DNA of 64,000 nt from Octopus sinensis (GCF_006345805.1 NW_021831859.1:87-64086); one strand, 5' to 3'. Shown: positions 16,730-41,150, counted from the first letter of the stretch. A program made the numbers and translations. Notes: generated by a model from the sequence alone, not told the origin.

Positions 16730-16795
<66 letters not shown>

Positions 16796-17431: not shown

Positions 17432-17464
<33 letters not shown>

Positions 17465-19332: not shown

Positions 19333-19369
<37 letters not shown>

Positions 19370-19428
19370 AATCTCTCTCTCAATCTCTCTCTCATTGTTG
19401 TCACAAAATTCTTTCTTTTGTGATTCAG

Positions 19429-19561
19429 GACAGAACTTGATCTTTGGGCCAGCATTGTCCAGTGTAAAACGATTCCTGGGATTTCTGTGAGACACCAAGG
19501 CATTGATGTTGTGATCATTCGGGAAAATACAGAAGGAGAATATTCCAACCTGGAACATGAG
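19429..19561 (+). CDS. IDH3G: IDH3G exon 6 ([44 protein letters not shown])
   Basis: [13 protein letters not shown] signature; attcAG / GTAAGC. Confidence 0.97.
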
Positions 19562-19717
19562 GTAAGCTTTCGTTTGACAACAGATTAACCTTACTATTGT
19601 TGTTGTTGTTGTTGCCGTCATTCAACCACCAGGTCGGCCCTGGGTCAGCATATCAAGAACCAAACATGCTCCAGCTGTAACACTCTTTTTTCCCCCAGAT
19701 ACAAGCACAACAATAAC

Positions 19718-20025
19718 TTTATTTACAATATTTGACATTTGTCCTCATCTTGTTTGTTGTTAACACAACGTTTCGGCTGATATACCCTCCAGCCTTCATC
19801 AGGTGTCTTGGGGAAATTTCAAACCTGGGTTCTCATTCCTAAGCTATTTTTCAATGTTATTATTATAATTATTCAGGTCACTGCCTGGAATCGAACTCGG
19901 AATCTTGGGGTTAGTAGCCCGTGCTCTTAACCACTACGCCATAATAACATCAAAAAAATACTTTAGTAATGAGAACCCAGGTTCGAAATTATCCCAAGAC
20001 ACCTGATGAAGGCTGCGGGGTATAT
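19718..20025 (-). mobile_element. tRNA-headed short element with hammerhead and inverted partial duplication
   Basis: A box TGGCGTAGTGG (19931-19941) and B box GTTCGATTC (19888-19896) on the minus strand, upstream of the hammerhead; arms about 19781-19866 and 19942-20025 are inverted. Confidence 0.65.
19762..19808 (-). ncRNA. Minimal type-I hammerhead ribozyme motif (Penelope-like)
   Basis: Minus strand AGACAC-CUGAUGA-A-GGCUG[gaggguauau]CAGCC-GAAAC-GUU/GUGUU: intact core, 5-bp stem II, 5-bp stem I, palindromic AACGUU stem III. Confidence 0.75.
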
Positions 20026-20539
20026 GATATGCTTCTTTCAGTTTCCGTCTACCAAATCCACTCACAAGGCTTTGGTCAGCCCAAGGTGCCACGCAGTGGG
20101 ACTGAACCCAGAACCATGTGGTTGGTAAGCAAACTACTTACCACACAGCCACTAAACTGTACACATGCAGACACAAACCTTTGGTTGTGTTGTTAAGGAG
20201 TTTGCTTTGCAACCTCATGGTTTTGAGTTCAATCCTGTGAGTTACTTGGTGACTTTAGTAGTGCCAGTGTCACAAGAAAAGCCCCCAGCACACTCTGTAA
20301 AGTGGTTGACGTTAGGAAGGACATCCAGTTATGGAAACCCTGCCAAAGCAGACACTGGAGCTTGCTGCAGTCCCCTTCCTTGTTGGACCTTCTCAAGTCA
20401 TCCAGCACATACCAGCAACCATTAAATGATGATGATTTATATCAGTGGTTCCCCCAAAGTGGTTGCTACTGTCCCCTTGGTGACAGTGGAAAATAAGTAG
20501 TGATGATGGTCTGTTTTCTTTTTATATATATACTCTTTT

Positions 20540-20940
20540 ACTCTTTTACTTGTTTCAGTCATTTGACTGCGGCCATGCTGGAGCACCGCCTTTTAATCGA
20601 GCAACTCGACCCCGGGACTTATTCTTTGGAAGCCCAGTACTTATTCTATCGGTCTCTTTTTGCCAAACCGCTAAGTGACGGGGACGTAAACACACCAGCA
20701 TCGCTTGTCAAGCAATGCTAGGGGGACAAACACAGACACACAAACACACACATACATATATACATACACACACATATATATATATGACAGGCTTCTTTCA
20801 GTTTCCGTCTACCAAATCCACTCACAAGGCATTGGTCAGCCCTGGGCTATAGCCAAAGACACTTGCACAAGATGCCACGCAGTGGGACTGAACCCAGAAC
20901 CATGTGGTTGGTAAGCAAGCTACTTACCACACAGCCACTC
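20540..20940 (-). mobile_element. Composite SINE copy
   Basis: Same family; ends about 47 nt before IDH3G exon 7. Confidence 0.8.
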
Positions 20941-20987
20941 ATATTGTTGTTTATTATTTATTTTTTGTGTGTTTCATATTTTTGTAG

Positions 20988-21121
20988 AATGTGAATGGAG
21001 TTGTTGAAAGTTTGAAGATCATCACCAGGAAACGATGCATGAATATTGCAAAATACGCATTCGATTATGCAGTGAAGCATGGACGCAAGAAGGTCACGGC
21101 TATTCACAAGGCAAACATAAT
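20988..21121 (+). CDS. IDH3G: IDH3G exon 7 ([45 protein letters not shown])
   Basis: [10 protein letters not shown] and RKKVTA-HKANIM signatures; tttgtAG / GTAAGG. Confidence 0.97.
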
Positions 21122-21843
21122 GTAAGGAGTGTTCGTACGTGTGGGTGTGTGTGAGTGTGAGTGTGTCTGAGTGTGTGTGAGTGTGTCTGAATGTGTGTGA
21201 GTGTGTGTGTGTGTGTCTGAATGTGTGTGTGTGTGTGAGTGAGTGTGTGTGTATCTGAATGTGTGTGTGTGTGTGTATGTGTGAGTGAGTGTGTGTGTGT
21301 GTGTGAGTATGTCTGAATGTGTGTGTCTGAGTGTGTATGTGTGTGTGTGTGTTGCTCCTTGTTGTTGTTTTTGTATCTTTGTTTGCTTGTTTCAATCATT
21401 GGACTGCGGCCATGCTGGGGCACTGCCCTAAAGGGATTTAGTCAAACAAGTCGACCGCAGCACTTAGTTGTTTGCTTAATAAATTCTGGTGCTTATTCTA
21501 TCAGTCCATTTTGCCAAACCACTAACTTAGGAGGACAAACATACACACACACATATATATTTCATCATCATCATCATTTAACATTCATTTTTCCTTGTAT
21601 AAGCCAGACAGAACACACACACACACACACACATATACATATATATATACACATATTTATAGGCACAGGAGTGGGTGTGTGGTAGTAGCTTGCTTACCAA
21701 CCACATGGTTCTGTGTTCAGTATTCTACTAAAGCCTCAGGCTGACCAAAGCCTTGTGAGTGGATTTGGTAGACGGAAACTGAAAGAAGCCCATCATATGT
21801 GTATATATATATATATATATGAAAATTCAACATTCTAGCAAAA

Positions 21844-21877
21844 ACTGTCCGACGAACGGGAACGTGAAACTCAGAGT
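21844..21877 (+). ncRNA. Degenerate hammerhead-like motif, third family
   Basis: ACUGU-CCGACGA-ACG[GGAA]CGU-GAAA-C-UC/AGAGU; U4 replaced by C, GNRA-capped stem II, one mismatch in stem I. Confidence 0.35.
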
Positions 21878-22281
21878 AACAGGTTTTGTTGAATTTTCTG
21901 CTGCTTTAAATAAAGCATATTACTCTACCTCTGGTATTTGAGTACTCTTTTTTTCCACCTTGTTTCACATTATGTGTTTACTCCGGTATATATATGTATA
22001 TATATATACACATATATATATGTTTGTGTTATATATATATATATATATTATATATATATATAATATATATATATATATATGTTTGTGCTTTTTATGTGCC
22101 ACCAGCACGAGAGCCAGTCAGGGGGTACTGGCATCATCCACGTTAGAATGTTGCTTTTTACGTGTGACAGTGTGACCCTAAATTTGCTAGGGAGTTGAGT
22201 GGAATGTGGCAGGAGGGAAGTGACAGTAGTGGGTAGATAAAGAGCCCTGATTATAATAATTTGCTTTTTATTTCTTTGTAG

Positions 22282-22384
22282 GAAACTTGGTGATGGACTG
22301 TTTCTAGAATGTTGCAAAAATGTTGCAGAAGAATATCCACAAATCGAATTCAATAATATGATTGTTGATAATGCTTGCATGCAG
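22282..22384 (+). CDS. IDH3G: IDH3G exon 8 ([34 protein letters not shown])
   Basis: KLGDGLFL and MIVDN--MQ motifs; tttgtAG / GTAAGG. Confidence 0.97.
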
Positions 22385-22613
22385 GTAAGGATTCCTGTCT
22401 CCATCTTTCCCTCTTCCTCCTTTTCTTTCTTCTGCTTCAGTGATAGGCTCAGTCTATCACCCTGTGTAACACCACCATGTGGCACCTTCGGTTACTTTAG
22501 CTCTTGCAGACATTGGTACAGAGGTCTCCAGATTAAGGATACTCTTTCCTTCCTTCCTCTGTCTTGGGGTCACAAGCACTGCCATTCCTTTCTGACATTA
22601 TCTTCATCATTTA

Positions 22614-23222
22614 AGGTGGCAAGCTAGCAGAAATGTTACCACGCCGGGCGAAATGCTTGGCGGTATTTCGTCTGTCTTTATGTTCTGAGTTCAAATTCTG
22701 CCGAGGTCGACTTTGCCTTTCATCCTTTTGGGATCAATAAATTAAGTACCAGTTGCGTACTGGAGTCGATCTTATTGACTGCAACCCTCCCCGAAAATTT
22801 CAGGCCTTGTGCCTAGAGTAGAAAAGAATATAAAGCAGCAAGCTGGCAGAAACATTACCATGCTGAGCGAAATTCTGAGTTCAAATTCCACCAAGGTTGA
22901 CTTTGCCTTTCATCCTTTCGGGGTCGATTAAATGAGTACCAGTTATGCACTGGGGTCGATGTAATCGACTTAATCTGTTTGTTTGTCCTTGTTTGTCCTC
23001 TCTGTGTGTAGTAAAGAAATAAGAAACTTTAGCACCCCAGGCGAAATGCTTGGCAGTATTTCATCTGTCTTTACGTTCTGAGTTCAAATTCCGCCGAGGT
23101 CAACTTTGCCTTTCATCCTTTCGGGGTCAATAAGCTAAGTACCAGTTGCATACTGGAGTCGATGTAATCGACTGGCCCCTTCCTCCAAAATTTCAGGCTT
23201 TGTGCCTAGAGTAGAAAAAATT
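22614..23222 (+). mobile_element. Three tandem SINE family A copies
   Basis: Three successive head/core units in the same orientation. Confidence 0.75.
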
Positions 23223-24046
23223 ATCTTTGTCATCATTTCTCATGCAATTGCCATGATGGCATGGGTCGGATCTGGCAAGCCATGGGCTACATCAAGTTCC
23301 AGCGTCTGCTGGATACCCTTCTTAATGCCAACCACCTTATAGTGTACCCGGGTTCTTTTTCATGACACCAGCACCTGTGAAGTCAACAAGTACAGACACC
23401 CTTCAGCTGAATGGTTTTGGAAGGGGTAGTAGAGAGGCAGGTGATTTTATGCCAGGTATCGAGACACTAAAGTATAATAAAGGGACACGCACAGGTTTCT
23501 TACTATGAAGGAGATACATTGCTACCCCACATCATATAAGGGTGGGTGGAAAGATGACGGTGATGTGGCATGAGAGTGTACTCTCAAAATACAAGATGAG
23601 TATAAGAGAGAATAGGGAGAAAGGATTGGCAAGGGGAGGTGGGTGGATAAGTCTATTAGGGTAAGAGGAAAGGGACAGATGTTTAGAGATGGGGGTGGAG
23701 GTGAGTGCCGGGAATGATGAAAAAAGCTGGAGATGTGGTGAATGGGGAAGATTAATGAGGTGAAAGAGGGATTAAAAGATACAGGAATGGCTCCGGGGGG
23801 GGGGGGGGGTAAGTGGCCATACTGGAAGGGTGGTGTGCAGTGGTTGTATGATAAAGTTGGGGATAGATAAAAAAATAGCTGGAGGAAAGAGTGAAAGAGA
23901 GAGATGTACAGTGCTGGAGATGAATGTCAGAGGTATGTAGGGGTGGCTGTAATCTAATCTATTTTCAGTGCTCCAGCCTGACCACAACTGAAAATGGGGT
24001 TGCACTGAAATCCATAAAAGACTGATCTATTCTGTTCTATTTCCAG

Positions 24047-24193
24047 ATGGTCTCCCATCCTCAACAATTTGATGTTTTAGTGTTGCCAAATCTTTATGGC
24101 AATATTCTAAGCAACGTTGCCACTGGAATGGTCGGAGGTGCTGGTGTTGTACCTGGCCGGAATATAGGAGATTCTTATGCCATTTTTGAAACT
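24047..24193 (+). CDS. IDH3G: IDH3G exon 9 ([49 protein letters not shown])
   Basis: PQQFDV-V-PNLYGNI motif; tttccAG / GTGAGT. Confidence 0.97.
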
Positions 24194-25084
24194 GTGAGTC
24201 AAAATTCAAACCAAATCAAATTTCTATAAACAATTTAAATTTTAATTAACTTTTCCTTTCTCTTGTTTATTTTAAATTTTTTATTTGTTATTTAATGTTT
24301 TTTTTTAATAGTTATTTGTTGTTTATCATCAACTGACCATAAATGTCAGGAGGTACAAGAGGTGAAAATATTTATTTGACCTCATGACATTCTTAGGGTT
24401 ACAGCCGTTTCGTAACCTTCTTCCTCATGTAATTTAATTTTAGTGCAGAAGAAATCATGTGTGCATATTCGCACTAATAGGCATGCTTGGCTTTATACAC
24501 TACAACTGTAATTTCAGAAATCAATGCAAATGAAGAAGGCTGGCTCATCAGATCACAAAACATCATTGTTAAATTGTTACATCAACAATTTGTCTGTTGA
24601 TGAATCCACCTTTTAACAGTATGGTAGTCCAATGGTACAGTAACACGCAGCTGATACCAGATGAGAACTAAGTACAAATCGAAATAACCAGCATCCCCAA
24701 CAAATATTAGGATGAGATGCGTTGAAATGGTTTCATCAGCCAGATAACTTTGATGTGAAGAAAGCAATGTTTCAAACCATTTTCTGTCCTTGATCAGAAA
24801 ATATTTTCTGAATAACCTCAAACTTCAGTTACTATTCAACAGGAACAACGTAAAGGTTAGCTAAAGCTGTTTGCAAAACATGTCAGTACCATTAAGTACC
24901 ACAATGCGTGCAAATAGACCAAGAGCGAAAGGAGATGCATGGAATTTCCAGAATACAGAGTTATTTCCCCTTGAAAGCAAATATTTAGAAAAACGTGTTT
25001 TGCTTCCCCTAGTAAAAACATACTGAAACTAAATATGGGGTTATAGAAATCACCTGTTGAAAAGATGCCTACCCCAACATAATA

Positions 25085-25770
25085 GTGCTGGTGACAAGTA
25101 AGCGAACCATCCGATCATGGCCGTTACCAGCCACGCCCCGACTGGCCTCCGTGCCGGTGGCACGTAAAAAGCACCATCCGTCCGTGGCCGTCTGCCAGCT
25201 CCGTCTGGCACCTGTGTGGGTGGCACGTAAAAAGCACTCACGGAGTGGTTGGAATTAGGAAGGGCGTCCAGCTGTAGAAACACTGCCAGATCTGACTGGG
25301 CCTGATGAAGCCTTCCAGCTTCACAGACCCCAGTTGAACCGTCCAACCCATGCTAGCATGGAAAGCGGATGTTAAACGATGATGATGATATAAGTTGTGG
25401 AGTTAAGAGACTTGCATTGTAACCACATGGTATCAAGTTCAGTCCCTGTACGTGTCCCCTTGTGCAAGTATCTTCTACTATAGTGATTGTTGCCAGGGCC
25501 AGCCTTACTGACCCCTGTGCCAGTGGCATGTAAAAAGCACCGTCTGAACGCGATCAATGCCAGTCCCACCTGACTGGCCCCCGTGCCGGCAGCACGTAAA
25601 AAGCACCCACTACACACTCTGAGTGGTTGGCGTTAGGAAGGGCATCCAGCTGTAGAAACCTTGCCAGATCAGACTGGAGCCTGGTGCAGCCTTCTGGTTT
25701 ACCAGTCCTCAGTCAAACTGTCCAACCCATGCCGGCATGGAAAACAAACGTTAAACGTTGATGATGATGT
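25085..25770 (+). mobile_element. Two RTE 3-prime UTR copies
   Basis: Same family as the 43912-45225 tail. Confidence 0.8.
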
Positions 25771-25847
25771 ATGTATACATGTGTGTATATATGCATTCCC
25801 TCACACACAGGTATGTATTTAACCTTTTGATTTCTGTGTTATAACAG

Positions 25848-25942
25848 GGTACACGAAACTCGGGTCGCTCCATCCAAGGAAAGAACATTGCCAACCCAAC
25901 GGGTATGTTATTAGCCAGCTGTGACATGCTAGATTACCTCGG
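25848..25942 (+). CDS. IDH3G: IDH3G exon 10 ([32 protein letters not shown])
   Basis: TRN-G-SI--KNIANPT--LLASC-ML is gamma-type (beta has ARHPFAQAVGRNIANP); aacAG / GTATGT. Confidence 0.95.
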
Positions 25943-26164
25943 GTATGTACCTGTGTTTCTGTCATTTACTTACACTACTACCTGTCTCCTCCTACTCCTC
26001 CTCTCTGTTTCCATCTTAATCTACAATTTTCTGTCTATACATACTCACACACACATATACATGCACACACATATACACACACATAAATATAGTTATAGAT
26101 AGATAGAGGTATTATATGTGTATATCTGTAGATATGTATGTGTGAGTTTGTGTGTGTGTGTGTA

Positions 26165-26244
<80 letters not shown>

Positions 26245-26573
26245 ATGTATGTATGTATATATGTATGTATATATATATATGTATGTATATATATATACAT
26301 ACACGTACACATGTAAAGAGCACCATTCAAGCATGATCATTGCCAGCGTCGCCTTACTGACACATTATTGAACAAATAAGTCCCTTGGGTTGATTTGTTC
26401 AACTAGAACCCTTCAAGGCTATGCTCCAGTATGGCCACAGTCAAATGACTGCAACAAGTACAAGAATAAAAGAATGCTCGCAAGTGCACAGGTTGTGATA
26501 ATTGCAATAGAGAAACAGTTTACATCGTGTGAGAGAATGTCTGCTGAAAATTCTTCCTTTCTTACCATTCCAG

Positions 26574-26634
26574 CTGCTACAGATACGCCACGATGATTCG
26601 AGAGTCAGTCATGAATGTATTGATTTCTAAGAAG
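26574..26634 (+). CDS. IDH3G: IDH3G exon 11 (CYRYATMIRESVMNVLISKK)
   Basis: Absent from the ORF track. ttcttaccattccAG / GTAAGA, 61 nt, phase 2 to 0, exactly bridges exons 10 and 12; aligns to the YA--IR-AV helix. Confidence 0.9.
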
Positions 26635-29091: not shown

Positions 29092-29184
29092 ATCCACACA
29101 CCAGACGTTGGCGGAACCTCCTCCACCAGCGAAGTGATTGAGGCCATCCTTGATGATCTCCGACCAAAAGCCAGCAGTTGGTAA
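29092..29184 (+). CDS. IDH3G: IDH3G exon 12 (IHTPDVGGTSSTSEVIEAILDDLRPKASSW*)
   Basis: HTPD-GG--ST motif; gatttcAG acceptor. TGG-TAA at 29179-29184 overlaps the donor TG|GTAAGT at 29181. Confidence 0.93.
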   Translation: MHTPDVGGTSSTSEVIEAILDDLRPKASSW

Positions 29185-30823
29185 GTATATGAAGTTACCT
29201 AACCAACCTGACAAGGAAGCCTCTATGCAGTCACACAGTCTCCCAAAAAATAGCAGTCAAATCTCCCTCAAATCAGAACTTTCCATCTTGTAAGAGGATG
29301 AGAGTTGTTGAGGATGTAATTTTGGACCAAAATAGGAAGTAAAGTGTCTTGTCCAAGAACACAACACACTTCCTGCACCAGGATTTGAACATGCAATCTT
29401 ATGATCAAGATCCCAGTTGCCTAACCACTTGGTCAAACATCTACACACACACACAGACACAAAATGTGTGTGTTTATAATATGTATATACACCATTGATA
29501 GGCCAGTTACCATGGTATTTGTGCTGAGATAACATGTCTTGTAAATGTGCTGCATTAAGAACATAGCAGATCCGAGAAGGAGACAAAGATCATCCCAGCA
29601 GCAGCCAGCAAGAACACCAGATGCATTTCAGCGTGTTTGGGCCTCTTCAGTGCTGTGTGCTCGCAGGCAGTCACATGCTTAGATGAGAATTCATCATCAT
29701 CATCATCATCGTTTAGCATCTGCTTTCCATGCTAGCATGGGTTGGACGGTTCGACCAGGGTCTGGGAAGCCAGAAGGCTGCACCAGGCTCCAGTCTGATC
29801 TGGCAGTGTTTCTACAGCTGGATGCCCTTCCTAACTCCAACCACTCATGACAGTAAATAATATAGCAGCCAAATCTCCCTCAAATTACACTGTGAATGTC
29901 TTACAAAAGAAGGCTACATTCCAATCCATTTCTATCTACCACCGAATACGGTCGCTACAGAAACACCTTTGACCATAAATCTGCAAGTTCAATCCTTAAC
30001 CTGAGCCTCATCCTATGTCATTGTTTGAATCAGAACCAGAGACTGAAAGGCAACAAAACCCAAATATTTACTCCTTCCTCAAAAACATTATTTTTTTTTT
30101 GGTGTATTTGTGTGGTTTTTCGCTGTTTTTTTTTTCGCCCTTTTAGCTCAACATCTTCAATCATGTTTCCATGAGTATTCTACAGATGCTTATGTCCTGC
30201 TCTCTCTCTCCTCCTTAACACCATTTTTTGTGTAACTTCAGTTCTTTTTTGCAGCTGCCATATTCTTCATGTTGAGCTTGTTTTAGCCATTTTGAGCAGC
30301 TTTCGCTGATTAAAAAGCTTCACTAAATTCATTCATGGCATGGTGTTGCTGAATTCTTCCGCATCATTCTTTCATTAACAACAAGCGTTGCAAATTTACA
30401 GCGGCTAGTTCCACTGCATAACGCATTCTACGTCTGCTGCTGCGCATAAACCATTGCAAGTGTTTTCCGTTCTTCTTCTACACGCTGCTTTTCGTTGCTG
30501 AACTAACTGCTTCAACCACCTCACCATCCACAACGTGGCACTGGGATGACAGCCACAGCTGTACATCACATGCTGGTGCAACAAAAACCCTGTTTACGGT
30601 GGGTTAACCTTCTACATTTGCGGCACCTGCCAGAGGGAGTGTTTGTCCAGGATAGGACTACACAGCCAGAGCAGGAGATGTATTAGGACATGAAATGTAA
30701 AAGCCAGACTAGATTATTTTATGCGCAACTCCATTGTCTCCCGAGACAAAAAGGATGCCAACAAACAACAATCTTCACCACAGACTTAATGGGATTATTT
30801 TTCCCTTTTTCTTTTTTTATATA

Positions 30824-31024
30824 TAGGGTGTTCAAAAAGTCCCTCCGCAGTGAGTTTTTTTACATCCTGACTCTCCAAGAGTACCTTGCACTGGTATCTT
30901 CTACTACAGCCCAAGGCCAATCAAATGTGCTTGCACACACACACACACACACATATACACACAGATAAATATAATTATAGATAGATAGACATATTATATG
31001 CGTATATCTATAGATATGCATATG

Positions 31025-31071
<47 letters not shown>

Positions 31072-31370
31072 AGGCGCAATGGCCCAGTGGTTAGGGCAGT
31101 GGACTCATGATCAGAGGATCGTGGTTTCGATTCCCAGACCGGGCGTTGTGTGTGTTTATTGAGCGAAAACACCTAAAGCTCCACGAGGCTCTGGCAGTGT
31201 AGAAGAGTCAACTTATGTATTGAAAACGAAGGATGACACTTTCATCACCTCCTATAAAGTTTTTTAAAGTCTCGTAAAGACTAATATATTCTTTTGTAGT
31301 CTTATACCATCTTCTAAATATTTATTTTGCAATAAAATACTTTCTGTGGAGAGACTTTTTGAACACCCTG
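30824..31370. mobile_element. Tc1/mariner-type MITE with nested SINE fragments
   Basis: TIR (C/T)AGGGTGTTCAAAAAGTC-CTCC at both ends; TA flanks. Confidence 0.75.
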
Positions 31371-31569
31371 TACTATAGACAGGCAGTGAGGTGGACCCTT
31401 TACGGCACCTGGGGAGGGAGGGAATAAGATAACCTCAGACGAGAGAGCTGACCCCAAATATTTGGAATAGTTTGAAGTCTATTAAAAATACCCACAAGGT
31501 GATCAGGTGATTGTGTTAAGCCTGATGATGGATTGAGTCTGTCACTCGTGTAGGTCATGGTAGGATTTG

Positions 31570-32020
31570 AACTTAGAATACAGTGTTGTAGCTCACACTT
31601 CAAAGCATCTGGCCTGACATTCTTACAGTTTCGTCAATCCACCACTTTGGAATGGTACATTTTTTTTTATCAACCTTGAAAGGATGAAAAAGCAAAGCTA
31701 ACCTTTTTGGGATTTGAACTCAAAACATAAGAGTCACAACAAATACTGCAAAACATCTGGCCTGCCATTCTTACAGTTCCATCACTGCACCACCTTATAT
31801 CTTTATTGCCCACAGGAGGCTAAATACAGAAGGGACAAACAAAGGGGCTAAGTTGATTACATTGACCCCCAGTGCGTAACTGGTACTTATTTAATCGACC
31901 CCGAAAGGATAAAAGGCAAAGTCGACCTCGGCGGAATTTGAACTCAGAACGTAGCGACAGATTAAATGCCGCTAAGCATTTTGCCCGGCGTGCTAACGTT
32001 TCTGCCAGCTCGCCGCCTTA
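31570..32020 (-). mobile_element. SINE family A copies (one near-complete, plus partial)
   Basis: Reverse-complement core repeated. Confidence 0.7.
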
Positions 32021-32742
32021 GGTAAGGTCAGGTATGAGGTTGAGGGCAAAGGTCATGCACCATTGCTGCATGTTCCTGCATCCCCCATTTGTTGGTATCT
32101 GCTCGGGGCCATTCTGAGCAATCCACCATGCTGTGTTCCGGTCACTTCACATCTCTGTGAAATAAGTCTTCGTCTGCCTTGACCATGGTTGCAAGACTAC
32201 AAACTCTGAGAAGGGTAGCTTTATGCTAAGGAGATCAGGGGCTAAACTATAAAAAAAAAGGGACCAGAGCAGAACAGGGTTTTTTGTTGTTGTAGAAGGG
32301 CTACATGGCTACTCACATTTTAGGAATGAGGACAGAATGGGGAAGAGATCAAAATACTAGTGGCGATGTGTATGTTTGGACCCTACATTAAAATGTAATT
32401 GCAATCACTTCCTGTATTACATAAGCTGTGGGACTGGTCTAAACAACAATAACATCAACAACATTTACATAACACATCTGTCTCTCTTTCTCTCTCTCTC
32501 TCACAGAACACAAACATATCTTTTTATATGTTTTTTTTTCCAGCTAAGTTTACCCAACAAACTTCTTTTATGTGTGTGTTTTTTTTATTTCAATGAAAGG
32601 AAAAGGACCTAACACCTCAGCGAGGGGACAGATTAGCCAAACCCTGTCTTGCCACCTGTGGAGGTTTCTATCTTTCATCTACCTGTTCACTTTGCTTCAC
32701 CCTATGCCAGCTCACACCCATCACAAACTTCTCTTTCTGCAG

Positions 32743-32762
32743 GTTATTCTAATCCCGATTTG
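32743..32762 (+). CDS. IDH3G: Candidate IDH3G micro-exon A (20 nt; gives ...SSWLF*)
   Basis: Branch-like CTCAC at 32711, acceptor ttctctttctgcAG, exon gttattctaatcccgatttg, donor GTGAGT; TAA at 32750-32752 in frame with the phase-2 donor at 29180. Confidence 0.6.
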
Positions 32763-33909
32763 GTGAGTGAAACGGCTTTCAGAACGAAACAAGCTCCTTT
32801 ACTTTTTTTCTGTTCTTTTTTTTTTATAATTTTTCTTTACTTTTTTTCACTTTTTTTTCTTTGAAATATTATCCATGGCCCTTTAATATTATTTTCTCTC
32901 CGTTGCTCATAAATCTCCGCAGCATGTCTCCTCCTCCTCATCCTCACTTGCTCATCACCATTTCAAATGTATTTCCATTGCAGTTGCCCCCTCGTTAACC
33001 TCATAATAATTAATAAACATTTGCTATCCCCCACGCTCTTTTCCATTTTTTTTTCCACACCCCAGCTTGCAATCCAACCCCAACAGCTTTTCATGTACCC
33101 TTCGCCCTCCCGTCTCACTCCCTCCTCTCATTATCACTTCTACCGCATCCCCTCCCTCCTTTCGTCATATATATACAACCCTTAATTATCACATTTTATC
33201 ATTAATTATCATTAACTGCATGTTTCCAAAATTGAGTCTTGAGTTAATTTATGTCTACCGGTGAGTGGTATGTGTTGGTGTTGTAGTGCTGAGGTGGTCA
33301 TGAATGCTGGTGCTATGTGTTTGTGATATAGTACTGTAGTGGTATATGTGGTTGTAATAGTGTTGTGATGGATAACAGTTATATACATAGTATGTTAATG
33401 CCACAGTAGAGTAAACAGTCATAGTATGTGTTGGTGTCACAATGATATGGTGGTATGGGTAACAGTGTGGCAGTGGTTGTCATAGACCCCACATTGGCCC
33501 CTAATTGAAAAGTCCTGAATCCAATGACACTCAGAGTTGTCAGTCGAATGACAAGACATGACCCCTAAGTCCCTCTTCCCAGTTACATCATGTCAGCTCC
33601 TACTTGCTGACCATACGACACATTCTAGCAGGACATTTTTTTTTTTGTGACCCAGAGAAGATAAAAGGCAAGAATCAACCTTGCCAGGATTTGAACTCGC
33701 ATGCAGACGGTTTGAACAACTACTGCAAGCCATTCTAACCAACACTCTAATACTTCTGTTGCTTGTTTACTGCCGGCCATTACTGTACGTTTCCACTTAT
33801 CATTGGTAGTTGCGAAGGTTACCAATGTTACTGCGGTTATTTATGTGTGATTGGGATCTGGTTGAAGAGACAGTGTGAACTGGGAAAGAAGCTGCAGGAA
33901 TTTCCTGGG

Positions 33910-34420
33910 ATCGTCATCATCGTTTAATGTCCATTTTCCATGCTAGCATGGGTTGGATGGTTCGACCAGGGTCTGGGAAGCCAGGAGGCCGCACCAGGCT
34001 CCAATCTGATCTAGCAATGTTTCTACAGTTGGATGCCCTTCCTAATGCCAACCACTCCAAGAGTGTAGTGGATGCTTTTTACGTACCACCAGCACAGGGG
34101 CCAATCAGGTGGCACTGGCATCAGCTACGTTTGGATGGTGCTTTTTACATGCTACCAGCACAGGTGCCAGTTGGGCAGGCAGGGTTGCATTGACCATGCT
34201 CGGATGGTGCTTTTTACATGCCTCCGCAATAGGGAAACAGTCAGGTGGCACTGGTAACAACCCATGCATGAATGGTGCTTATTGCATGCCACCAGCACTG
34301 GAGCCAATCAGGTGACACTGGTAACAACCCATGCATGAATGGTGCTTATTGCGTGCCACCAGTACAGGAGCCAGTCAGACAGCACTGGCATGGCCACAAC
34401 TACAATTTGATTATGATTTG
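33910..34420 (-). mobile_element. Older RTE 3-prime UTR copy
   Basis: Same family, diverged; internal 67-nt duplication. Confidence 0.7.
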
Positions 34421-35417
34421 AGTTTTGATTTTGATGTTACAGGAAATGTTACAGAGGCATTTGGCAGTGATTGTTCACGTCACAGTTGTGACAGTTATTG
34501 ATGTTACTGCAGCTGTTTATGCTTGGGTAAGATCTGACGGGGGAGGAGAATGGTGTGAGGGAGGCGTTTTGGTAGAGTCTTTGGACGTTGCAGATGTGTG
34601 TGGTGTGGCGGTCAGTGTGGCGGTCAGTGTGCATGCTGTGACTGAGATTGGGAAGCTCGGAGCTTGCTGTGTCATCAATCTGTGACCCTCACAAAACAAC
34701 CCAAGCAGGACCAACATAATCATCATCATCATCATTTAATGTCTGTTTACCATGCTGGCATGGGTTGGACAGTTTGACAGAAGAACTAACAAGCCAAAGA
34801 GGTGTACCCAGCTCCAGTTATCCCTTTTGGCATGGTTTCTACAGTTGGATGCCCTTCCTAACGCCAACCACTTTACAGAGTGGCACTTGGGTGCTTTTTA
34901 CGTGGAACCGGCACAAGTGCCTTTTATAATGGATTTAATATGTTTGATGTATAACATTGTTGTTGATTCTTTGGAATTTGACCAAATACGGTTCCTGCAA
35001 GTGTTCAAAGTATGTTCATGTATTGTTTTACTTTCCTTACCACATGTTCTGTTAATGTTGTAACCACATGTTGCATCTAATTCCTAATACATTATTATTT
35101 TGCATTTTGTGTTTATGTTCCATGTTGTTTAATGCGAGAATCAGTTGTCTTTGATGTTCTCTGTTAGCACTGGTAAGGCGGGGCACAGTGGGTTTTGGTA
35201 GGTGCCAATTTAAGTCTGTTTGCCTAGAATTATCAGGTTGCTGGATTGTCTCTTTGTTGATGCCAGCTTGGAGTAATTAGACGACTGCGTCTGAGGAATG
35301 ATAGGAGGGTATGACTAAGGGTATCATACAGGGTATATATACCTTGTTGGCAGGTGAACATTTATGCCAGTGGCTCTCATACATGTACACCAGGGTGCTG
35401 TGGTGCACTATGCACTT

Positions 35418-36004
35418 TTAGATATATTCAAAAAGAGAATTGCAGCTTGCTTGAACCATTCATCATCATCGTTTAGCGTCTGCTTTCCATGCTGGCATGG
35501 GTTGGACGGTGCAACTGGGGTCTGGGAAGCCCGAAGGCTGCACCAGGCCCAGTCTGATCTGGACCGTTCTGTGTTTCTACTGCTGGATGCCCTTCCTAAC
35601 GCCAACCACTCCGTGAGTGTAGTGGGTGCTTTTTACGTGCCACCCGCACAGGTGCCAGACAGGGCTGGCAAATGGCCACGGTCGGATGGTGCTTTTTACG
35701 TGCCACCGGCACAGAAGCCAGTCAGGGCGGCACTGGCAACGGCCACGTTTGGATGGTTCTCTTATGTGCCACCAGCACTGAATCACAGATGCAATTTCCA
35801 TTGATGTTGATCGACTTCGATTTTGGTTCTGATTTCCACTTGCCTCAACAGATCTTCACAATGGAGTTTTGTGTCCCAAGAAGGAAAGGTATGCATAAGT
35901 CGACTGGCTACATCCCAGGTAGAGGCCATGGGTTATGGTCTCACTTGTCCTGCCGGGTCTTCTCATGCACAGCATACTTCCATAGGTCTCGGTCTCTAGT
36001 CATT
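35418..36004 (-). mobile_element. RTE 3-prime fragment including the ORF end
   Basis: Reverse complement of 44690-45225. Confidence 0.85.
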
Positions 36005-36309
36005 TGCAGCAAAATAATGAAGATGGAGAGCATCTCACAATACAACAAGGAAAAGTTTAATATCCTTTATATATTTCAGGCACAAAGGCTTGTCATCAGA
36101 AGTGCTGAGTCTATAGAGTACTGACCAAACATGGCTAATTTACACTGTAGACTCACATTTCTTTAATTCATTTGTTCCTGATGACGGGCTGTTCTGCCTG
36201 AAATATAAAGGTTATTAAATTTTTTCCTTTTCCCCATTGTATGAGGCTTTCCATTTTCAGTATTTTATATTTAAGGCCTTTAAGGTATCGAAAAACCCTT
36301 ATTTAATGC

Positions 36310-36539
36310 TGAACCCTTTAGCATTTAAACCAGCAATATCCAACTCAAATATTCTACCTGCTTTTACATTGAAACTGACCAGATCATGCCTCTCACATCT
36401 ACCCTACAATGTCATTCTAAAAAGTGAAAGATCACTCCATTAAAATCCAGAATCTACCAAGATGATCCATGATTAATTCAAACAGTAAGGATAAATAAGC
36501 ATTGTGCTTGACAGATTAATCTGAATGCTAAAGGGTTAA
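36310..36539. mobile_element. piggyBac-type MITE family F
   Basis: Aligns with 10440-10668; ends about 43 nt before micro-exon B. Confidence 0.75.
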
Positions 36540-36582
36540 GCTTTAAAAAAAAAAACCATTACCATAATTTTATTATATACAG

Positions 36583-36601
36583 GTGTTACTAATTAAACAA
36601 G
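36583..36601 (+). CDS. IDH3G: Candidate IDH3G micro-exon B (19 nt; gives ...SSWCY*)
   Basis: Acceptor ttttattatatacAG, exon gtgttactaattaaacaag, donor GTAAGC; TAA at 36590-36592; same layout as micro-exon A. Confidence 0.55.
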
Positions 36602-36879
36602 GTAAGCAATAGATTTTTGGTATTTTTTTTAGTTTTAAATTTTTTAAATGGATTTTTTTTTTTAGTCTTTCTATGCAAAATGCACCAATAATTTTTTGGC
36701 TTGATTTCCAATGTACTTCAAAGTGAGAACTATTGATCTATGTAGACACATCATCAGCTATAATTAACACTGAAGTTTACCTGAAAGTTAAGAGGTGTAT
36801 CCAAATTCTACAGTGTAAAGGGGTCACCAGGGCCCAGGACAGAGAAGGCACACTTTTTTTAATTAATTACTACTTATAA

Positions 36880-37100
36880 AGGCAGTGAGCTGGCAGAATC
36901 GTTAGCACGCCAGGTGAAATGCTTAGTGGTATTTCCTTTGTCTTCTGAGTGTTCTGAGTTCAAATTCCACTGAGGTCAACTTTGCCTTTCATCCTTTTGG
37001 GGTTGATAAATTAAGTACCAGTTGCGTACAGGGGTCGATCTAATTGACTGGCCCCCTCCCCAAAAATTTTGGGCCTTGTGCCTAGAGTAGAAAAGAATAT
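36880..37100 (+). mobile_element. SINE family A copy
   Basis: Head and core as at 7860-8058. Confidence 0.75.
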
Positions 37101-37126
37101 TATTACTACTTATATATATATATATA

Positions 37127-37163
<37 letters not shown>

Positions 37164-37436
37164 GCACATACAAGGCTGTGTGGTTAGAAGTTTGCTTCCT
37201 GACCACTTGGTTCCAGGTTCAATCCCACTGCGTGGTACCGTGGGCAAGTGTCTTCTTCTGTAGCCTTGGGCTGACCAAGCCTTGTGAGTGGATTTGGTAG
37301 GCGGAAACTGAAAGAATCCTGTTGTATGTATGTGTGTGTGTTTGAGTTTGTGTTTGTCCCCCCACCACCACCACTTGACAACTGGTGGTGGGGACAAACA
37401 CTTCAAAAATAAATACTGAGATCAATGCATTCAAAT

Positions 37437-37736
37437 CAAGGGTTCCCAACTGAGGTCCACAGACGCTTTAAGGGGGTCCATGAGTAAAAAATTGTAATTT
37501 GTGGGTCCATATATGAATTTTGTTTACTAGAAGAGGTTCCTGTATTTATTGAAGTTTTCAAGATTTGTATTTTGAATTTCTGTTATGAATATAAGGAAAT
37601 TGTTTCATTGTTAGTCTTTACTAACCTATTTGCAAATATTTTATTTCAAAAATTTTACATGTGTATATATGAGGGTCCACAGATAATAAGATAGCTCTCA
37701 TGGAATCCACAAGTAAAATTAGGTTGGGAACCCCTG
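37437..37736. mobile_element. hAT (Charlie-like) MITE
   Basis: TIR CA(A/G)GGGTTCCCAAC at both ends; no 8-bp TSD retained. Confidence 0.55.
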
Positions 37737-38311
37737 ACGTAGGTGATACCCTTGCTGTCGAAAAAGGGGATCATCATGAGTTTACTTTGTGTGACCCCTT
37801 TTGCCAGTGAAAAACAGGGGCTTGACGCATACAAGTTAATCCCTAAGCAGTGTGGAGCATTTCTTCAGTTCCTGAAGCATTTTTGCCGAAAACTTTATTG
37901 CAAAGCAAACTTCCAAATTGGTTTCACGGCCCAAACGTATTCCATAAACCAGTCAGTTGTGACAAGCAGTGTTTTGTAGGGTGTGTTATAGGGGCTGCTA
38001 CAACTGTCCCCTTCAGTATGGAATATCAGGATTCTGCAGGTCAGCTTATTAGATGCATAATAATGGATTACAATAATTCAGGACCCTTAGAATAACCACT
38101 CCTAACAAAAAAATGTCTCAAAACTTCTGAAATACATATTGTATATGTTAGTGTATAATTGTGTGTAAGTATGTGTGTGTGTGTTAATGTATAATTGTAT
38201 ATGTGTATGTGACAGTGTATACCTGAGTATGTGCATGTGTATAAATGAGCATGTATATATGTATGTAAGTGTATAAATGTCTCTGTGTGTGTGTTGATGT
38301 ATGTATATATA

Positions 38312-39179
38312 TGAGGGAGTACCCTAAAGAAACCAGAATTTTGCAATATTATTTTATCCCCTTAGTTTTGCATGTTTACACTTTTATCACCTTCAAAGTA
38401 TTCTCCATTTGAAGCAATGCATCGGTCGAGACACGTTCTCCACTGTTTAAAGCAGTGCTGGGGTTCTTGCCAAGTGATCTCGTTTTTTTCCTTCACCTCT
38501 TCCACATCTGCAAATTCCGTAGCACCAGCTTTCATCACCAGTGATGACCTTCGAATCAAAAGTCCAGATCAACGTCCAGCTATTCTTTCAGTCCTTGACA
38601 TGCATTCACTCGTGACTGCTTTTGATCTTCCATGACCAAACAAGGCACAATTTTGCTGCAACTCTTTTCATCCGTAATTCCTCACTCAAAATTCGTTGGC
38701 AGGAGCACCAAGACACACCAGTCATACCAACAAGTCTGTCAATTGTTTGGTGACGGTCCTCCAAGACCACTTCGTGAATTTTCCTGTATTCATTCCTTTG
38801 GGAGTTTGATGGTTTCCCTGAACGAGGTTGGTCTTCAAGCGACAAGTGACCATTCCTCGTAAACGTGTTTTGATCATGGCAGCATCCTTTTAAGCTATAA
38901 GAAGCATGACAACTGTTTTGGCCACCGTTTTCCGCAGCAGAAAACAGAATTTCATGGAAGCACACTTTTCTTCATTTCAGCCATCGCAAAACTCAGCGAA
39001 CAAAGGAGAAGCAACACAAAACAAATACGCACCATGTGTCAGTACAACTGCACTTGACAATGCTGGTCTGCAGCCTGATGCCTGAGGTTTGCATCAAGTG
39101 GTTTCTAGCAACAGAAGCCTGAACTACAATGGGCTTGTCCCACAGAAAACATTTCACGTGACTTTAGGGCGCCCCTTCA
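38312..39179 (-). mobile_element. Internally deleted mariner element (transposase pseudogene)
   Basis: Peptides LEDQPRSGKPS..RILSEELRMKRVAAK and CFKQW..RCIASNGEYFEGD; degenerate TIRs TGAGGG..CCCTAAAG; TA flanks. Confidence 0.85.
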
Positions 39180-39319
39180 TATATTTGTGCATAACTGCTT
39201 CTGTGTATTTATATATTTGTTTTGCAAGATTCTTGATGTGAAATCATGTGTTGAAACAGATGTTTGTTGTATTTAGGAATGGTCATGTTGCCAGTTTAGC
39301 CAATAAACTCTGGCCAAAA

Positions 39320-39865
39320 TCATCATCATCATCATTTAACGTCTGCTTTCCATGCTGGCATGGGTTGGATGGTTCAACTGGGGTCTGGGAAGCCCGAAGG
39401 CTGCACCAGGCTCCAGTCTGATCTGGCAGTGTTTCTACGGCTGGATGCCCTTCCTAACGCCAACCACTCCGTGAGTGTAGTGGGTGCTTTTTACGTGCCG
39501 CCGGCACAGGTGCCAGGGGAGTCTGGCATCGGCCACGATCGGTTGGTGCTTTTAACATGCCACCGGCACGAAAGCCAGTCAAGGCGGCGCTGTCATCGGC
39601 CACGTTCGGATGGTGCTTTTTGTGTGCCATCGGCACAGAAGCCAGTCAAGGCGGCTCTGGCATCGGCCACGTTCAGATGGTGCATTTTATGTGCCACCGG
39701 CACAGAAGCCAGTCGAGGCGGCGCTGGCATCGGCCACGTTCGGATGGTGCTTTTTATGTGCCACCAGCACAGAAGCCAGTCGAGGTGGCACTGGCATCGG
39801 CCACGTTCGGATGGTGCTTTTTATATGCCACCGGCACAGAAGCCAGTCGAGGCGGCGCTGGCATC
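39320..39865 (-). mobile_element. RTE 3-prime UTR copy with five tandem 67-nt units
   Basis: Units start at 39531, 39598, 39665, 39732, 39799. Confidence 0.85.
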
Positions 39866-40613
39866 TAATGTAAAAAATAAATAAAGCTGATGCAAATGAA
39901 CACCAAATATACAGTGCATGTGTTTTTATTGGCTAAACTGGCAACATGACCACCCCCAAATACAACAGTGTTTGTGTGTATTTTGGTATGTAGCTGTATG
40001 TTAGTGCGCATAAATCTATCTGCGTCGTATAATTGCCTGTATATGTAATTTGCGTTGTTACTGCATGCGTATTTGCCTGTTGCCGAAGATAAGAGGGCAT
40101 TGTTGTTGTTGTTGTCATTGATGTCGTTTTAGATACCTGCTTAATCTTTAAATCAATTGATTCCACAGCTTCCGACGACGATCCTATTGACCTAATTATG
40201 GCTCTAACCAATCAACTGTTAATTACAAGCAACACCTCATTGTCAGTGTGGTGATTGGGTAGGGTGCAAGGACACACGTGGGTGTGCGGGCAGGGCCTTT
40301 AAAAAGTGGCTGCATGCACCTGAGGCATGGCTCATCATCAGACAAGCCACGCTACTAAAAATAAAAGTGAAAGTAAATTTTTCTTTAGGCATGCCCTTCA
40401 AAAGCTCCCAGGGGCCACAGTTTGCTTATGACTGGTGTCAGGTATATATCGTATGTGCGGTGATTGTGCAAAATATGTGTTGGCTTAGATTTTACGTAGA
40501 AAATATACTGCATCAATTATTTTTACTATTCAAATTAATATCATCATCATCATCATTGTCATTTTCGTTATTATTATTATCATCATCGTTATTTTTGTTA
40601 CTATCATAATTAG

Positions 40614-40649
<36 letters not shown>

Positions 40650-40749
40650 CATTATTTATGGGTTTTTCTTCTTTCAAATTTGCTTCCATTTCTTGCCGAG
40701 TGTCTTCCCGACTCCTAGGGCAAAGAAACTCTATTATTATTATTATTAG

Positions 40750-40780
<31 letters not shown>

Positions 40781-40890
40781 GTTGTTGTTATTATTATCAT
40801 TGTTGTTGTTGTTATCATTATTGTCATCGTCATTATTGCAATGAAATATTTATATTTATGTTTATTTGTTTTGTTTTTGTTTTTTTCCAG

Positions 40891-41150
40891 AACCAGCAAA
40901 TCCAGGATAAACCTCCAAAAACCATTATTTATCTCAGTTATCCAAGATATTTACTGTTGCTGTTGTTGTTGTTGTTCCTTTGAATCTCAACTCAAGTCGG
41001 TTAATTAACTGACAGAGATAATGTATCATAAATAATCCTTAATCTTTAATCTCTTTAAAACCACGTCACAGAACAAGTATTATTTCCTTAATCCGTGTAG
41101 TAAAGATATCCTGTAAGGTTTGTTAGTAAATAGTTATTGCTTGAAAGTGT
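40891..41150 (+). other. IDH3G: Candidate terminal 3-prime UTR exon of IDH3G (end not defined)
   Basis: Very strong polypyrimidine acceptor ttttgtttttgtttttttccAG followed by unique sequence; no poly(A) site assigned. Confidence 0.35.

What the first reader, a model, noticed from the sequence alone, without database searches (positions are those of the whole stretch)
29179..40900. IDH3G C-terminus may be switched by two look-alike stop-codon micro-exons
Seen: the last coding exon ends TG|GTAAGT, so the stop (TGG TAA) overlaps a perfect donor. Two tiny candidate exons follow, each with a good acceptor and a GTRAG donor: A 32743-32762 (g tta ttc TAA tcccgatttg) and B 36583-36601 (g tgt tac TAA ttaaacaag). 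Both supply the G completing Trp, add two codons, stop with TAA, and splice out 10 or 9 nt later; 8 of their first 11 nt are identical, suggesting exon duplication. A strong acceptor at 40890 gives TG|A, an immediate stop, if both are skipped. Inference: up to four tails (SSW*, SSWLF*, SSWCY*, SS*), one carrying a Cys. The stops lie under 50 nt from the next junction, so they should escape junction-dependent NMD. If both exons are included, A dominates. Knowledge: tissue-specific C-terminal splicing is known for vertebrate IDH3 regulatory subunits; I know of no report of this two-micro-exon layout.
Basis: partly seen in the sequence, partly recalled or inferred. Interest (0 to 1): 0.8.

Follow-up and report, generated by a model that had tools for sequence, protein, structure and literature searches.

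The report
Octopus IDH3G tail-switching micro-exon, already annotated

Summary
The window is Octopus sinensis contig VCDQ01003560.1 and carries a 12-exon IDH3G gene.

Two of the four predicted tails are already RefSeq isoforms, and I rebuilt both exactly from window junctions:
- X3 (...SS) uses 29180|40891.

Exon A is a genuine, ancient cassette micro-exon. It is recognisable in O. bimaculoides, Argonauta and cuttlefish genomes. Six cuttlefish RNA-seq contigs differ by exactly its 23-nt homologue. Cuttlefish also has a second, 14-nt stop-carrying micro-exon, but that one matches the start of the octopus 40891 exon, not exon B.

Exon B (...SSWCY) has no annotated isoform in either Octopus species and no counterpart in Argonauta or Sepia. 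Its acceptor tract is weak. Chance alone would give about 0.2-0.7 such sites in this intron. Its perfect conservation in O. bimaculoides is not an outlier. The proposed A/B duplication is not significant.

Verdict: real, but ordinary and largely already annotated. Exon B remains an open, testable candidate.

The parts
13070..13144 (+). IDH3G coding exon 1 (start codon at 13070)
   Evidence: tblastn of the P0062 N-terminus. These boundaries are the only ones that rebuild P0062 exactly. The recorded gene range starts at 13070.
15423..15500 (+). IDH3G coding exon 2
16608..26634 (+). IDH3G coding exons 3-11: 16608-16696, 17548-17663, 18002-18059, 19429-19561, 20988-21121, 22282-22384, 24047-24193, 25848-25942, 26574-26634
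   Evidence: tblastn probe, splice-site search, assembled model with canonical AG/GT at every boundary, exact match to the RefSeq proteins
29092..29180 (+). Last common coding exon (exon 12). It ends ...AGC AGT TG, a phase-2 boundary inside a TGN codon.
   Evidence: It is identical around the donor in O. bimaculoides. The same TG|GT boundary is found in Argonauta, Sepia and Mya.
29181..29186 (+). Donor GTAAGT. If the intron were retained, TGG TAA would give ...SSW*.
32600..32742 (+). Upstream extension of exon A from the alternative acceptor ...caatgaaag|G at 32599/32600. It encodes G AAA AGG ACC TAA, the ...SSWKRT tail of RefSeq isoform X1.
   Evidence: Pattern search and exact rebuild of P0185. 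The acceptor and the extension are conserved in O. bimaculoides, with perfect runs of 43 and 58 nt. That X1 uses the 32762 donor is inferred, not shown.
32743..32762 (+). Micro-exon A (20 nt): G TTA TTC TAA + 10 nt. Cassette exon giving ...SSWLF (RefSeq isoform X2).
   Evidence: Homologues: O. bimaculoides 19 nt, Argonauta 72 nt, Sepia pharaonis 23 nt. Inclusion and skipping are seen in Sepia RNA contigs.
32763..32815 (+). Donor GTGAGTGAA plus conserved intronic motifs (GCTTTCA, ACAAGCT, T-run) downstream of exon A
   Evidence: Alignment A1. Sepia vs Octopus local score 62 against a shuffle maximum of 34. A regulatory role is inferred.
36583..36601 (+). Candidate micro-exon B (19 nt): G TGT TAC TAA + 9 nt. 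Its use in splicing is unverified.
   Evidence: The sequence is present. It is identical in O. bimaculoides within a 78-nt perfect run, but runs of 76, 63 and 62 nt occur elsewhere in the intron. No annotated ...SSWCY isoform exists. No homologue in Argonauta or Sepia. Chance expectation is 0.2-0.7 per intron.
40891..41000 (+). Start of the 3' terminal exon. Its first base, A, completes TG|A and so gives ...SS (RefSeq isoform X3). Bases 40891-40905 (AACCAGCAAATCCAG) are the likely homologue of the cuttlefish 14-nt micro-exon B' but lack its donor. The exon's 3' end was not determined.
   Evidence: The CDS range ends at 40891 and at the homologous base in O. bimaculoides. B' alignment p about 0.006. 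UTR similarity to Argonauta around 40940-40995. Candidate AATAAA at 42164.

Best explanation
This is the 3' end of the Octopus sinensis gene for the gamma (regulatory) subunit of mitochondrial NAD-isocitrate dehydrogenase. The last coding exon common to all isoforms ends with the first two bases (TG) of a codon, so the first base of whichever exon is spliced on next decides the outcome.

- Joining the 20-nt cassette micro-exon A (32743-32762) gives TGG = Trp, then Leu-Phe-stop (...SSWLF).
- Using an acceptor 143 nt upstream (32600) gives Trp-Lys-Arg-Thr-stop (...SSWKRT).
- Skipping straight to the terminal exon at 40891 gives TGA, so the protein ends ...SS.

These three products are the three RefSeq isoforms. 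Exon A, its splice sites and a stretch of intron after its donor have been kept since before octopuses and cuttlefish diverged, and cuttlefish mRNAs show it both included and skipped. It is therefore a regulated alternative exon rather than noise.

Exon B is most likely a fortuitous pseudo-exon, or at most a minor or untranslated-region exon. It is not needed to explain any annotated product.

Shown: the junctions, the isoform identities, the conservation, and alternative use in cuttlefish RNA. Inferred: that the choice is regulated, that the conserved intronic motifs control it, and that the tails change enzyme behaviour.
For: - Gene identity. The protein is 100% identical to O. sinensis IDH3G isoform X2. 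It scores 458 bits to human IDH3 gamma, against 371 to beta and 274 to alpha.
- Isoforms. The cluster holds O. sinensis X1 (396 aa...SSWKRT), X2 (395 aa...SSWLF) and X3 (392 aa...SS), and O. bimaculoides X1 (...SSWLF) and X2 (...SS). All three O. sinensis proteins are rebuilt exactly from window junctions 29180|32600, 29180|32743 and 29180|40891.
- CDS range. It ends at 40891 and at the homologous base in O. bimaculoides.
- RNA evidence. Sepia contigs from six sequencing runs differ only by the 23-nt GTTGTTTTCATAGACCAGATTTG. In the S. pharaonis genome this is a free-standing exon with AG/GT boundaries.
- Conservation. Exon A is conserved in O. bimaculoides, Argonauta and Sepia.
- The same TG| boundary occurs in the bivalve Mya arenaria, followed by a C-L-A-stop exon. 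Mollusc-wide, annotated tails diverge right after this position.
Against: - No octopus RNA reads or transcript contigs could be examined directly. For Octopus itself the evidence is RefSeq model proteins plus homology.
- Relative abundance and tissue distribution of the isoforms are unknown.
- A 0-4 residue difference beyond the conserved fold (the alignment to human gamma ends at ...DDLR) may have no biochemical effect.
- Exon B cannot be excluded. It is perfectly conserved in O. bimaculoides, and the scan that finds it gave no false positives in about 34 kb of the homologous Sepia and Argonauta intervals.
Confidence: 0.85

Rival explanations
1. Exon B is a genuine second cassette micro-exon, so Octopus makes a fourth, Cys-containing tail (...SSWCY) when A is skipped and B is included.
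For: - B has a canonical CAG|G acceptor and a GTAAGC donor.
- It is one of only two hits of the fixed-criteria scan in the intron, and the other hit is real.
- The same scan returned only verified exons in the Sepia and Argonauta intervals.
- B lies in the longest perfect Osin/Obim identity run of the intron, 78 nt.
- Cuttlefish shows that a second stop-carrying micro-exon can exist in this gene.
Against: - No ...SSWCY isoform exists in either annotated Octopus species, although both the A and the skip isoforms are annotated in each.
- The polypyrimidine tract is weak and A-rich, 8/14, against 11/14 for A.
- Argonauta has no counterpart. The cuttlefish second micro-exon aligns to the 40891 exon (p about 0.006), not to B (p about 0.37).
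- Identity runs of 76, 63 and 62 nt occur elsewhere in the intron.
- Chance expectation is 0.2-0.7 sites per intron.
Confidence: 0.2
2. Exon B is spliced, but only downstream of exon A, as an exon of the 3' untranslated region. It changes the mRNA and not the protein.
For: - With A and B both included, the protein is still ...SSWLF.
- Protein-level data cannot see such an exon.
- In Sepia the second micro-exon is present in all six contigs, whether or not A is included.
- B is conserved in O. bimaculoides.
Against: - X3 requires a direct 29180|40891 junction, so B is at least skippable.
- Each O. sinensis isoform appears with a single XP accession, so there is no sign of extra transcript variants encoding the same protein.
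- The other points against B in the previous rival apply here too.
Confidence: 0.15
3. The tail differences are functionally neutral. What is conserved is an mRNA-level device (where the stop lies relative to the last junction, 3' UTR composition, or splicing-coupled regulation of expression), not a protein switch.
For: - Tail sequences vary among cephalopods (WLF, WLSA, WLFS, W, or none) and among molluscs.
- The non-coding 10 nt after the stop and the intron after the donor are at least as well conserved as the codons.
- The skipped form ends ...SS in Octopus but ...KSW in Sepia.
- The tails lie outside the region that aligns to solved IDH3 gamma structures.
Against: - The Trp immediately after the boundary, and a hydrophobic residue after it, recur widely in molluscs. 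That suggests some selection on the peptide.
- No expression or stability data are available.
Confidence: 0.35
4. The annotated isoforms are gene-prediction artefacts. The real mRNA simply reads through or ends after 29180, giving ...SSW*.
For: TGG TAA is in frame at the donor. I could not inspect any octopus RNA directly.
Against: - Independent annotations of two Octopus species agree.
- Assembled cuttlefish and squid-like transcripts are spliced exactly at the homologous TG| boundary and contain the exon A homologue.
- Exon A and its splice sites are conserved across cephalopods.
Confidence: 0.03

Closest known systems
RefSeq gene models for Octopus sinensis IDH3G (XP_036354753.1 X1, XP_029654669.1 X2, XP_029654670.1 X3) and O. 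bimaculoides (XP_014772031.1, XP_014772038.1)
   Same: These are the same locus and the same junctions.
   Different: They are computational models. I found no paper describing them.
Cuttlefish (Sepia) IDH3G 3' end: 23-nt micro-exon A plus 14-nt micro-exon B'
   Same: The last coding exon ends TG. It is followed by tiny exons that start with G, carry an early stop, and end 10 nt after that stop. A is alternatively included in RNA contigs.
   Different: In Sepia the second micro-exon gives ...KSW* and appears in every contig seen. Its octopus counterpart has lost the donor and become the start of the terminal exon, with first base A instead of G, so the skipped form ends ...SS. Octopus exon B is not its homologue.
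Vertebrate IDH3B alternative C-termini (beta isoforms A/B; own knowledge: Kim et al. 1999, J Biol Chem 274:36866. The PDB uses the name 'Isoform A of ... subunit beta')
   Same: A regulatory subunit of the same enzyme whose C-terminus is changed by alternative splicing at the 3' end of the gene.
   Different: It is a different paralogue (beta, not gamma). As I recall, the vertebrate tails are tens of residues long and come from alternative last coding exons. Here the tails are 0-4 residues, set by a 20-nt cassette and by a stop codon completed across the junction. I did not test the vertebrate gene structure.
Conserved bilaterian micro-exons (3-27 nt) regulated by SRRM/eMIC factors (own knowledge: Irimia et al. 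2014; Torres-Mendez et al. 2019)
   Same: Very short cassette exon, deep conservation, conserved flanking intron, and a UC-rich tract with UGC next to the acceptor of octopus exon A.
   Different: Classical neural micro-exons keep the reading frame inside proteins, whereas this one carries the stop codon. Neural-specific inclusion was not testable here. Argonauta lacks the UGC next to its acceptor.

Membership tests
IDH3 gamma subunit (NAD-isocitrate dehydrogenase regulatory subunit) | Iso_dh (PF00180) fold across the protein | tested here: met
   Precomputed PF00180 on P0062 and all hits, and on the gene in the locus.
IDH3 gamma subunit (NAD-isocitrate dehydrogenase regulatory subunit) | Closer to gamma than to the beta or alpha paralogues | tested here: met
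   458 bits to human gamma chains, against 371 to beta and 274 to alpha. The top named hits are all 'subunit gamma'.
Alternative cassette micro-exon | Exon of 30 nt or less with canonical AG and GT on both sides in genomic DNA | tested here: met
   Exon A is 20 nt. Homologues are 19 nt in O. bimaculoides and 23 nt in Sepia. Argonauta is an exception at 72 nt.
Alternative cassette micro-exon | Both included and skipped mRNAs exist | tested here: met
   Sepia RNA contig L004 skips it and L005-L009 include it. For Octopus this rests on RefSeq isoforms X2 and X3 only, because no octopus RNA was reachable.
Alternative cassette micro-exon | Conserved across species beyond the intron background | tested here: met
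   Exon A. Exon B: conserved only between the two Octopus species and not above background, so inconclusive for B.
Tandem exon duplication (A and B as paralogous exons) | Sequence similarity of the exons and flanks beyond chance | tested here: not met
   4 of 7 unconstrained positions match, P about 0.08. The only local alignment of the flanks is through T-runs, p about 0.06.
Escape from nonsense-mediated decay (NMD) by the 50-55 nt rule (vertebrate exon-junction model) | Stop codon less than about 50 nt upstream of the last exon junction | tested here: inconclusive
   Distances from stop to junction: exon A 10 nt, exon B 9 nt, Sepia A and B' 10 nt each. X1 is about 150 nt if it uses the same donor, and Argonauta is 59 nt. 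Whether cephalopod NMD depends on junctions cannot be tested here.
SRRM/eMIC-dependent neural micro-exon | UGC next to the acceptor with an upstream UC-rich tract | tested here: inconclusive
   Octopus has ucucuuucugcag|G. Sepia has UGC further upstream. Argonauta has UC-rich sequence but no UGC next to the acceptor. The motif definition is recalled from memory.
SRRM/eMIC-dependent neural micro-exon | Inclusion enriched in nervous tissue and dependent on the factor | not testable with these tools
   No tissue-resolved octopus RNA data were reachable.

The most novel reading that the evidence does not exclude
The TG-ending last exon is a molluscan Trp/Cys/stop switch that is regulated by tissue. 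In this reading, exon A belongs to a conserved, possibly neural, micro-exon programme and sets a functional hydrophobic tail on the allosteric gamma subunit. Octopus has in addition evolved exon B as a lineage-specific third option with a Cys-containing tail. That would tie alternative micro-exon splicing to control of a TCA-cycle enzyme in cephalopods.
Probability: 0.12. Interest if true: 0.5.

Novelty: already known. Interest (0 to 1): 0.22.

Why it matters
As it stands this matters little. The verified part restates existing RefSeq isoforms of a housekeeping gene, and the tails differ by only 0-4 residues outside the conserved fold.

The comparative picture is a tidy example of how a codon split by an intron lets splice choice decide between Trp, Cys and stop. 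It also shows how a stop-carrying micro-exon of about 20 nt, together with its flanking intron, can persist from before the octopus-cuttlefish divergence.

If the tails turned out to alter allosteric regulation or assembly of IDH3, or if inclusion were tissue-specific, this would become a compact model for micro-exon control of mitochondrial metabolism in cephalopods.

Tried and rejected
- Octopus transcript evidence. Exact look-ups of X2 and X3 returned nothing and X1 returned only the genome contig. A short C-terminal query carrying ...SSWCY found no candidates. A 131-aa C-terminal query found no octopus fragments other than P0040. So octopus RNA could not be examined.
- P0040, a degenerate IDH3G-like O. 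bimaculoides protein, might be a retrocopy that preserves an old mRNA 3' end. Its locus is not on record.
- A homologue of exon B in Argonauta. Sensitive blastn gave only low-complexity hits, and the pattern scan found none.
- Exon B as the homologue of cuttlefish B'. Rejected: alignment p about 0.37, against about 0.006 for the 40891 exon.
- A/B exon duplication. Rejected as not significant.
- Two-species conservation as proof of B. Rejected, because perfect runs of comparable length occur elsewhere in the intron.
- Literature. Three searches and one paper read gave nothing on cephalopod or molluscan IDH3G tails.
- tRNA-like elements in the interval. ARAGORN found none.
- Mya arenaria isoform X2 (...RTDT). 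I could not locate its acceptor, and the recorded range end at L012 48589 is not preceded by AG. Only the TG| boundary and the C-L-A exon are claimed for Mya.
- My first attempt at the short query failed on the 40-aa minimum. Two scripts failed on trivial errors.

Full report
**What is in the sequence.**
- The last coding exon ends ...GCC AGC AGT TG|GTAAGT at 29180/29181.
- Exon A is ctttctgcag|GTTATTCTAATCCCGATTTG|gtgagt (32743-32762).
- Exon B is tatatacag|GTGTTACTAATTAAACAAG|gtaagc (36583-36601).
- A strong acceptor, tttttttccag|AACCAG, puts an exon start at 40891.

**The gene.** I probed the window by tblastn with a remembered human IDH3G sequence, used only to locate exons. A splice-site search then gave a clean model with canonical AG/GT at every boundary. 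A protein search identified it as Octopus sinensis IDH3G at 100% identity. The window is contig VCDQ01003560.1 shifted by 86 nt. The gamma assignment is supported by scores of 458 bits to human gamma chains, 371 to beta and 274 to alpha. With the two 5' exons, the full coding model is 13070-13144, 15423-15500, nine internal exons, and 29092-29180.

**The tails are already annotated.** The 90% identity cluster of this protein holds three O. sinensis RefSeq isoforms and two from O. bimaculoides.

| Species | Isoform | Length | Tail |
|---|---|---|---|
| O. sinensis | X1 | 396 aa | ...SSWKRT |
| O. sinensis | X2 | 395 aa | ...SSWLF |
| O. sinensis | X3 | 392 aa | ...SS |
| O. bimaculoides | X1 | 395 aa | ...SSWLF |
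| O. bimaculoides | X2 | 392 aa | ...SS |

I rebuilt all three O. sinensis proteins residue for residue from window junctions.
- X3 is 29180|40891, where TG|A makes the stop.

The recorded coding range of the gene ends exactly at 40891, the A that completes the stop. In O. bimaculoides it ends at the homologous base. No database protein ends ...SSWCY, and none in Octopus ends ...SSW.

**Exon A is real, alternative and old.**
- In O. bimaculoides, the 32600 acceptor, exon A and the GTGAGT donor are all conserved. Identity there is about 95%, against 86% for the aligned intron as a whole.
- Argonauta keeps the TG|GTGAGT boundary. About 3.4 kb downstream it has cttctctttc...ccaccag|G TTG TCT GCC TAA ... 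CTTG|gtgagtgaa. The acceptor tract and the donor are recognisably the same as in Octopus, with a TAA-rich insertion that swells the exon to 72 nt.
- Cuttlefish RNA-seq contigs from six runs give direct RNA evidence. One reads ...AAAAGCTG|GTAAACAAATCCAG... (...KSW*). Five read ...AAAAGCTG|GTTGTTTTCATAGACCAGATTTG|GTAAACAAATCCAG... (...KSWLFS*).
- In the Sepia pharaonis genome that 23-nt insert is a free-standing exon, ttcttcacag|...|gtgagtgcag, 11.7 kb after the last coding exon.
- A squid-like contig carries the same exon.
- Sepia and Octopus align through the exon and into the intron after the donor, including the motifs GCTTTCA and ACAAGCT. The score is 62 against a shuffle maximum of 34. Conserved flanking intron is typical of a regulated exon, but that role is inferred.

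**A second micro-exon exists in cuttlefish, but it is not exon B.** The 14 nt GTAAACAAATCCAG present in all six Sepia contigs is its own exon in the genome, tatatttttttcag|GTAAACAAATCCAG|gtaagt. When A is skipped, it supplies G + TAA. With its flanks, however, this exon aligns to the start of the octopus 40891 exon (tttttttccag|AACCAGCAAATCCAG|gataaa; p about 0.006). It does not align to octopus exon B (p about 0.37). The likely history is that the octopus lineage lost this exon's donor (GT to GA), so the exon now runs on as the terminal exon. Its first base is A, so the skipped form stops at TGA instead of reading Trp then TAA. This history is inferred.

**Exon B.**

In its favour:
- It has canonical splice sites.
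- It is one of only two hits of a fixed-criteria scan of the interval.
- The same scan returns only verified exons in about 34 kb of the homologous Sepia and Argonauta intervals.
- It lies in the longest perfect-identity run between the two Octopus species, 78 nt.

Against it:
- No annotated isoform uses it in either species.
- Its pyrimidine tract is poor, 8/14.
- Argonauta has nothing like it.
- Identity runs of 76, 63 and 62 nt occur elsewhere in the same intron.
- Chance gives 0.2-0.7 such sites per interval.
- The supposed A/B duplication fails. Four of the eight shared bases were fixed by how the exons were chosen, and the remaining 4 of 7 matches give P about 0.08. The flanks align only through T-runs, p about 0.06.

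I could not reach any octopus RNA, so B stays open. I put about 0.2 on B being a coding cassette and about 0.15 on it being a UTR-only exon.

**Wider context.** Across molluscs, the annotated gamma proteins share ...KPK-x-x-W and then diverge, often with several isoforms per species. In the bivalve Mya arenaria the last common exon ends ...GAC ACA TG|GTGGGT, and a downstream exon cattacag|C CTA GCA TAG gives ...DTCLA. The split TGN codon at this boundary is therefore older than cephalopods. I could not locate the acceptor for the Mya ...RTDT isoform.

The tails lie beyond the part that aligns to solved human gamma structures, which ends at ...DDLR. Any effect on the enzyme is therefore conjecture.

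**NMD.** The distances from stop to junction are 10 nt for A, 9 nt for B, and 10 nt for both Sepia exons. They are about 150 nt for X1, if it shares A's donor, and 59 nt in Argonauta. Whether the vertebrate 50-nt rule applies to cephalopods is not known to me.

**Comparison and verdict.** The closest known things are:
- the RefSeq models of this very gene;
- the cuttlefish arrangement described here;
- from my own knowledge, the alternative C-termini of vertebrate IDH3B and the conserved bilaterian micro-exons.

Literature searches found no description of the cephalopod layout. The verified core is already known at database level and biologically ordinary. The only part that could be new, exon B and a Cys-containing tail, is unproven and more likely fortuitous.

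Noticed in passing
window 32763-32815 (also L003 27596-27660, L010 65541-65600): The intron just after the exon A donor carries motifs shared by Octopus, Argonauta and Sepia: GTGAGTG.A, GCTTTCA, ACAAGCT, then a T-run. The rest of the introns is unalignable at that distance. This is probably a splicing control element.
   Followed up: partly
window 32725-32742: The exon A acceptor is preceded by ucucuuucugcag, a UC-rich tract with UGC next to the AG. As I recall, this resembles the cis code of SRRM/eMIC-dependent neural micro-exons. It is a lead only.
   Followed up: no
window 39075-39150 and 33193-33255: Perfect-identity blocks of 76 nt and 63 nt between O. sinensis and O. bimaculoides, deep in the intron, with no obvious exon features. 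Unexplained.
   Followed up: no
window 37170-37231 and many other intron sites (e.g. 29690-29846, 34715-34914, 39319-39670): Repeated SINE-like elements, some with a tRNA-like core (ggttcaatcccactg), hit several places in the O. bimaculoides locus. ARAGORN calls no tRNA in 29-42 kb.
   Followed up: partly
window 40905/40906: A CAG|G inside the terminal exon, homologous to the cuttlefish B' exon end, would give a 34-residue Cys-rich tail (...SSWINLQKPLF...CCCCCC...) if used as an acceptor. Not annotated.
   Followed up: partly
L003 27524-27595 (Argonauta hians): The exon A homologue is expanded to 72 nt by a TAA/TAATAA repeat insertion between the stop and the conserved 3' part. This puts the stop 59 nt from the donor.
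   Followed up: partly
L010 53808-74292 (Sepia pharaonis): The same 3' architecture is spread over about 20 kb, with introns of 11.7, 6.1 and 2.6 kb, and contains a 14-nt exon, one of the shortest free-standing exons one is likely to see.
   Followed up: yes
protein P0040 (O. bimaculoides, 118 aa): A degenerate IDH3G-like protein, 53% identical, spanning several exons' worth of sequence without the middle of one of them. It may be a retrocopy or pseudogene. Its locus could not be fetched.
   Followed up: partly
window 43858-44745 (+): A 296-aa open reading frame downstream of the gene, with only sub-threshold PHD/C1 zinc-finger matches. Probably a transposon remnant.
   Followed up: partly
L012 46281-48503 (Mya arenaria): The bivalve IDH3G shares the TG|GT phase-2 boundary and has a C-L-A-stop exon 2.2 kb downstream. 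The acceptor for its ...RTDT isoform was not found, and the recorded range end (48589) is unexplained.
   Followed up: partly
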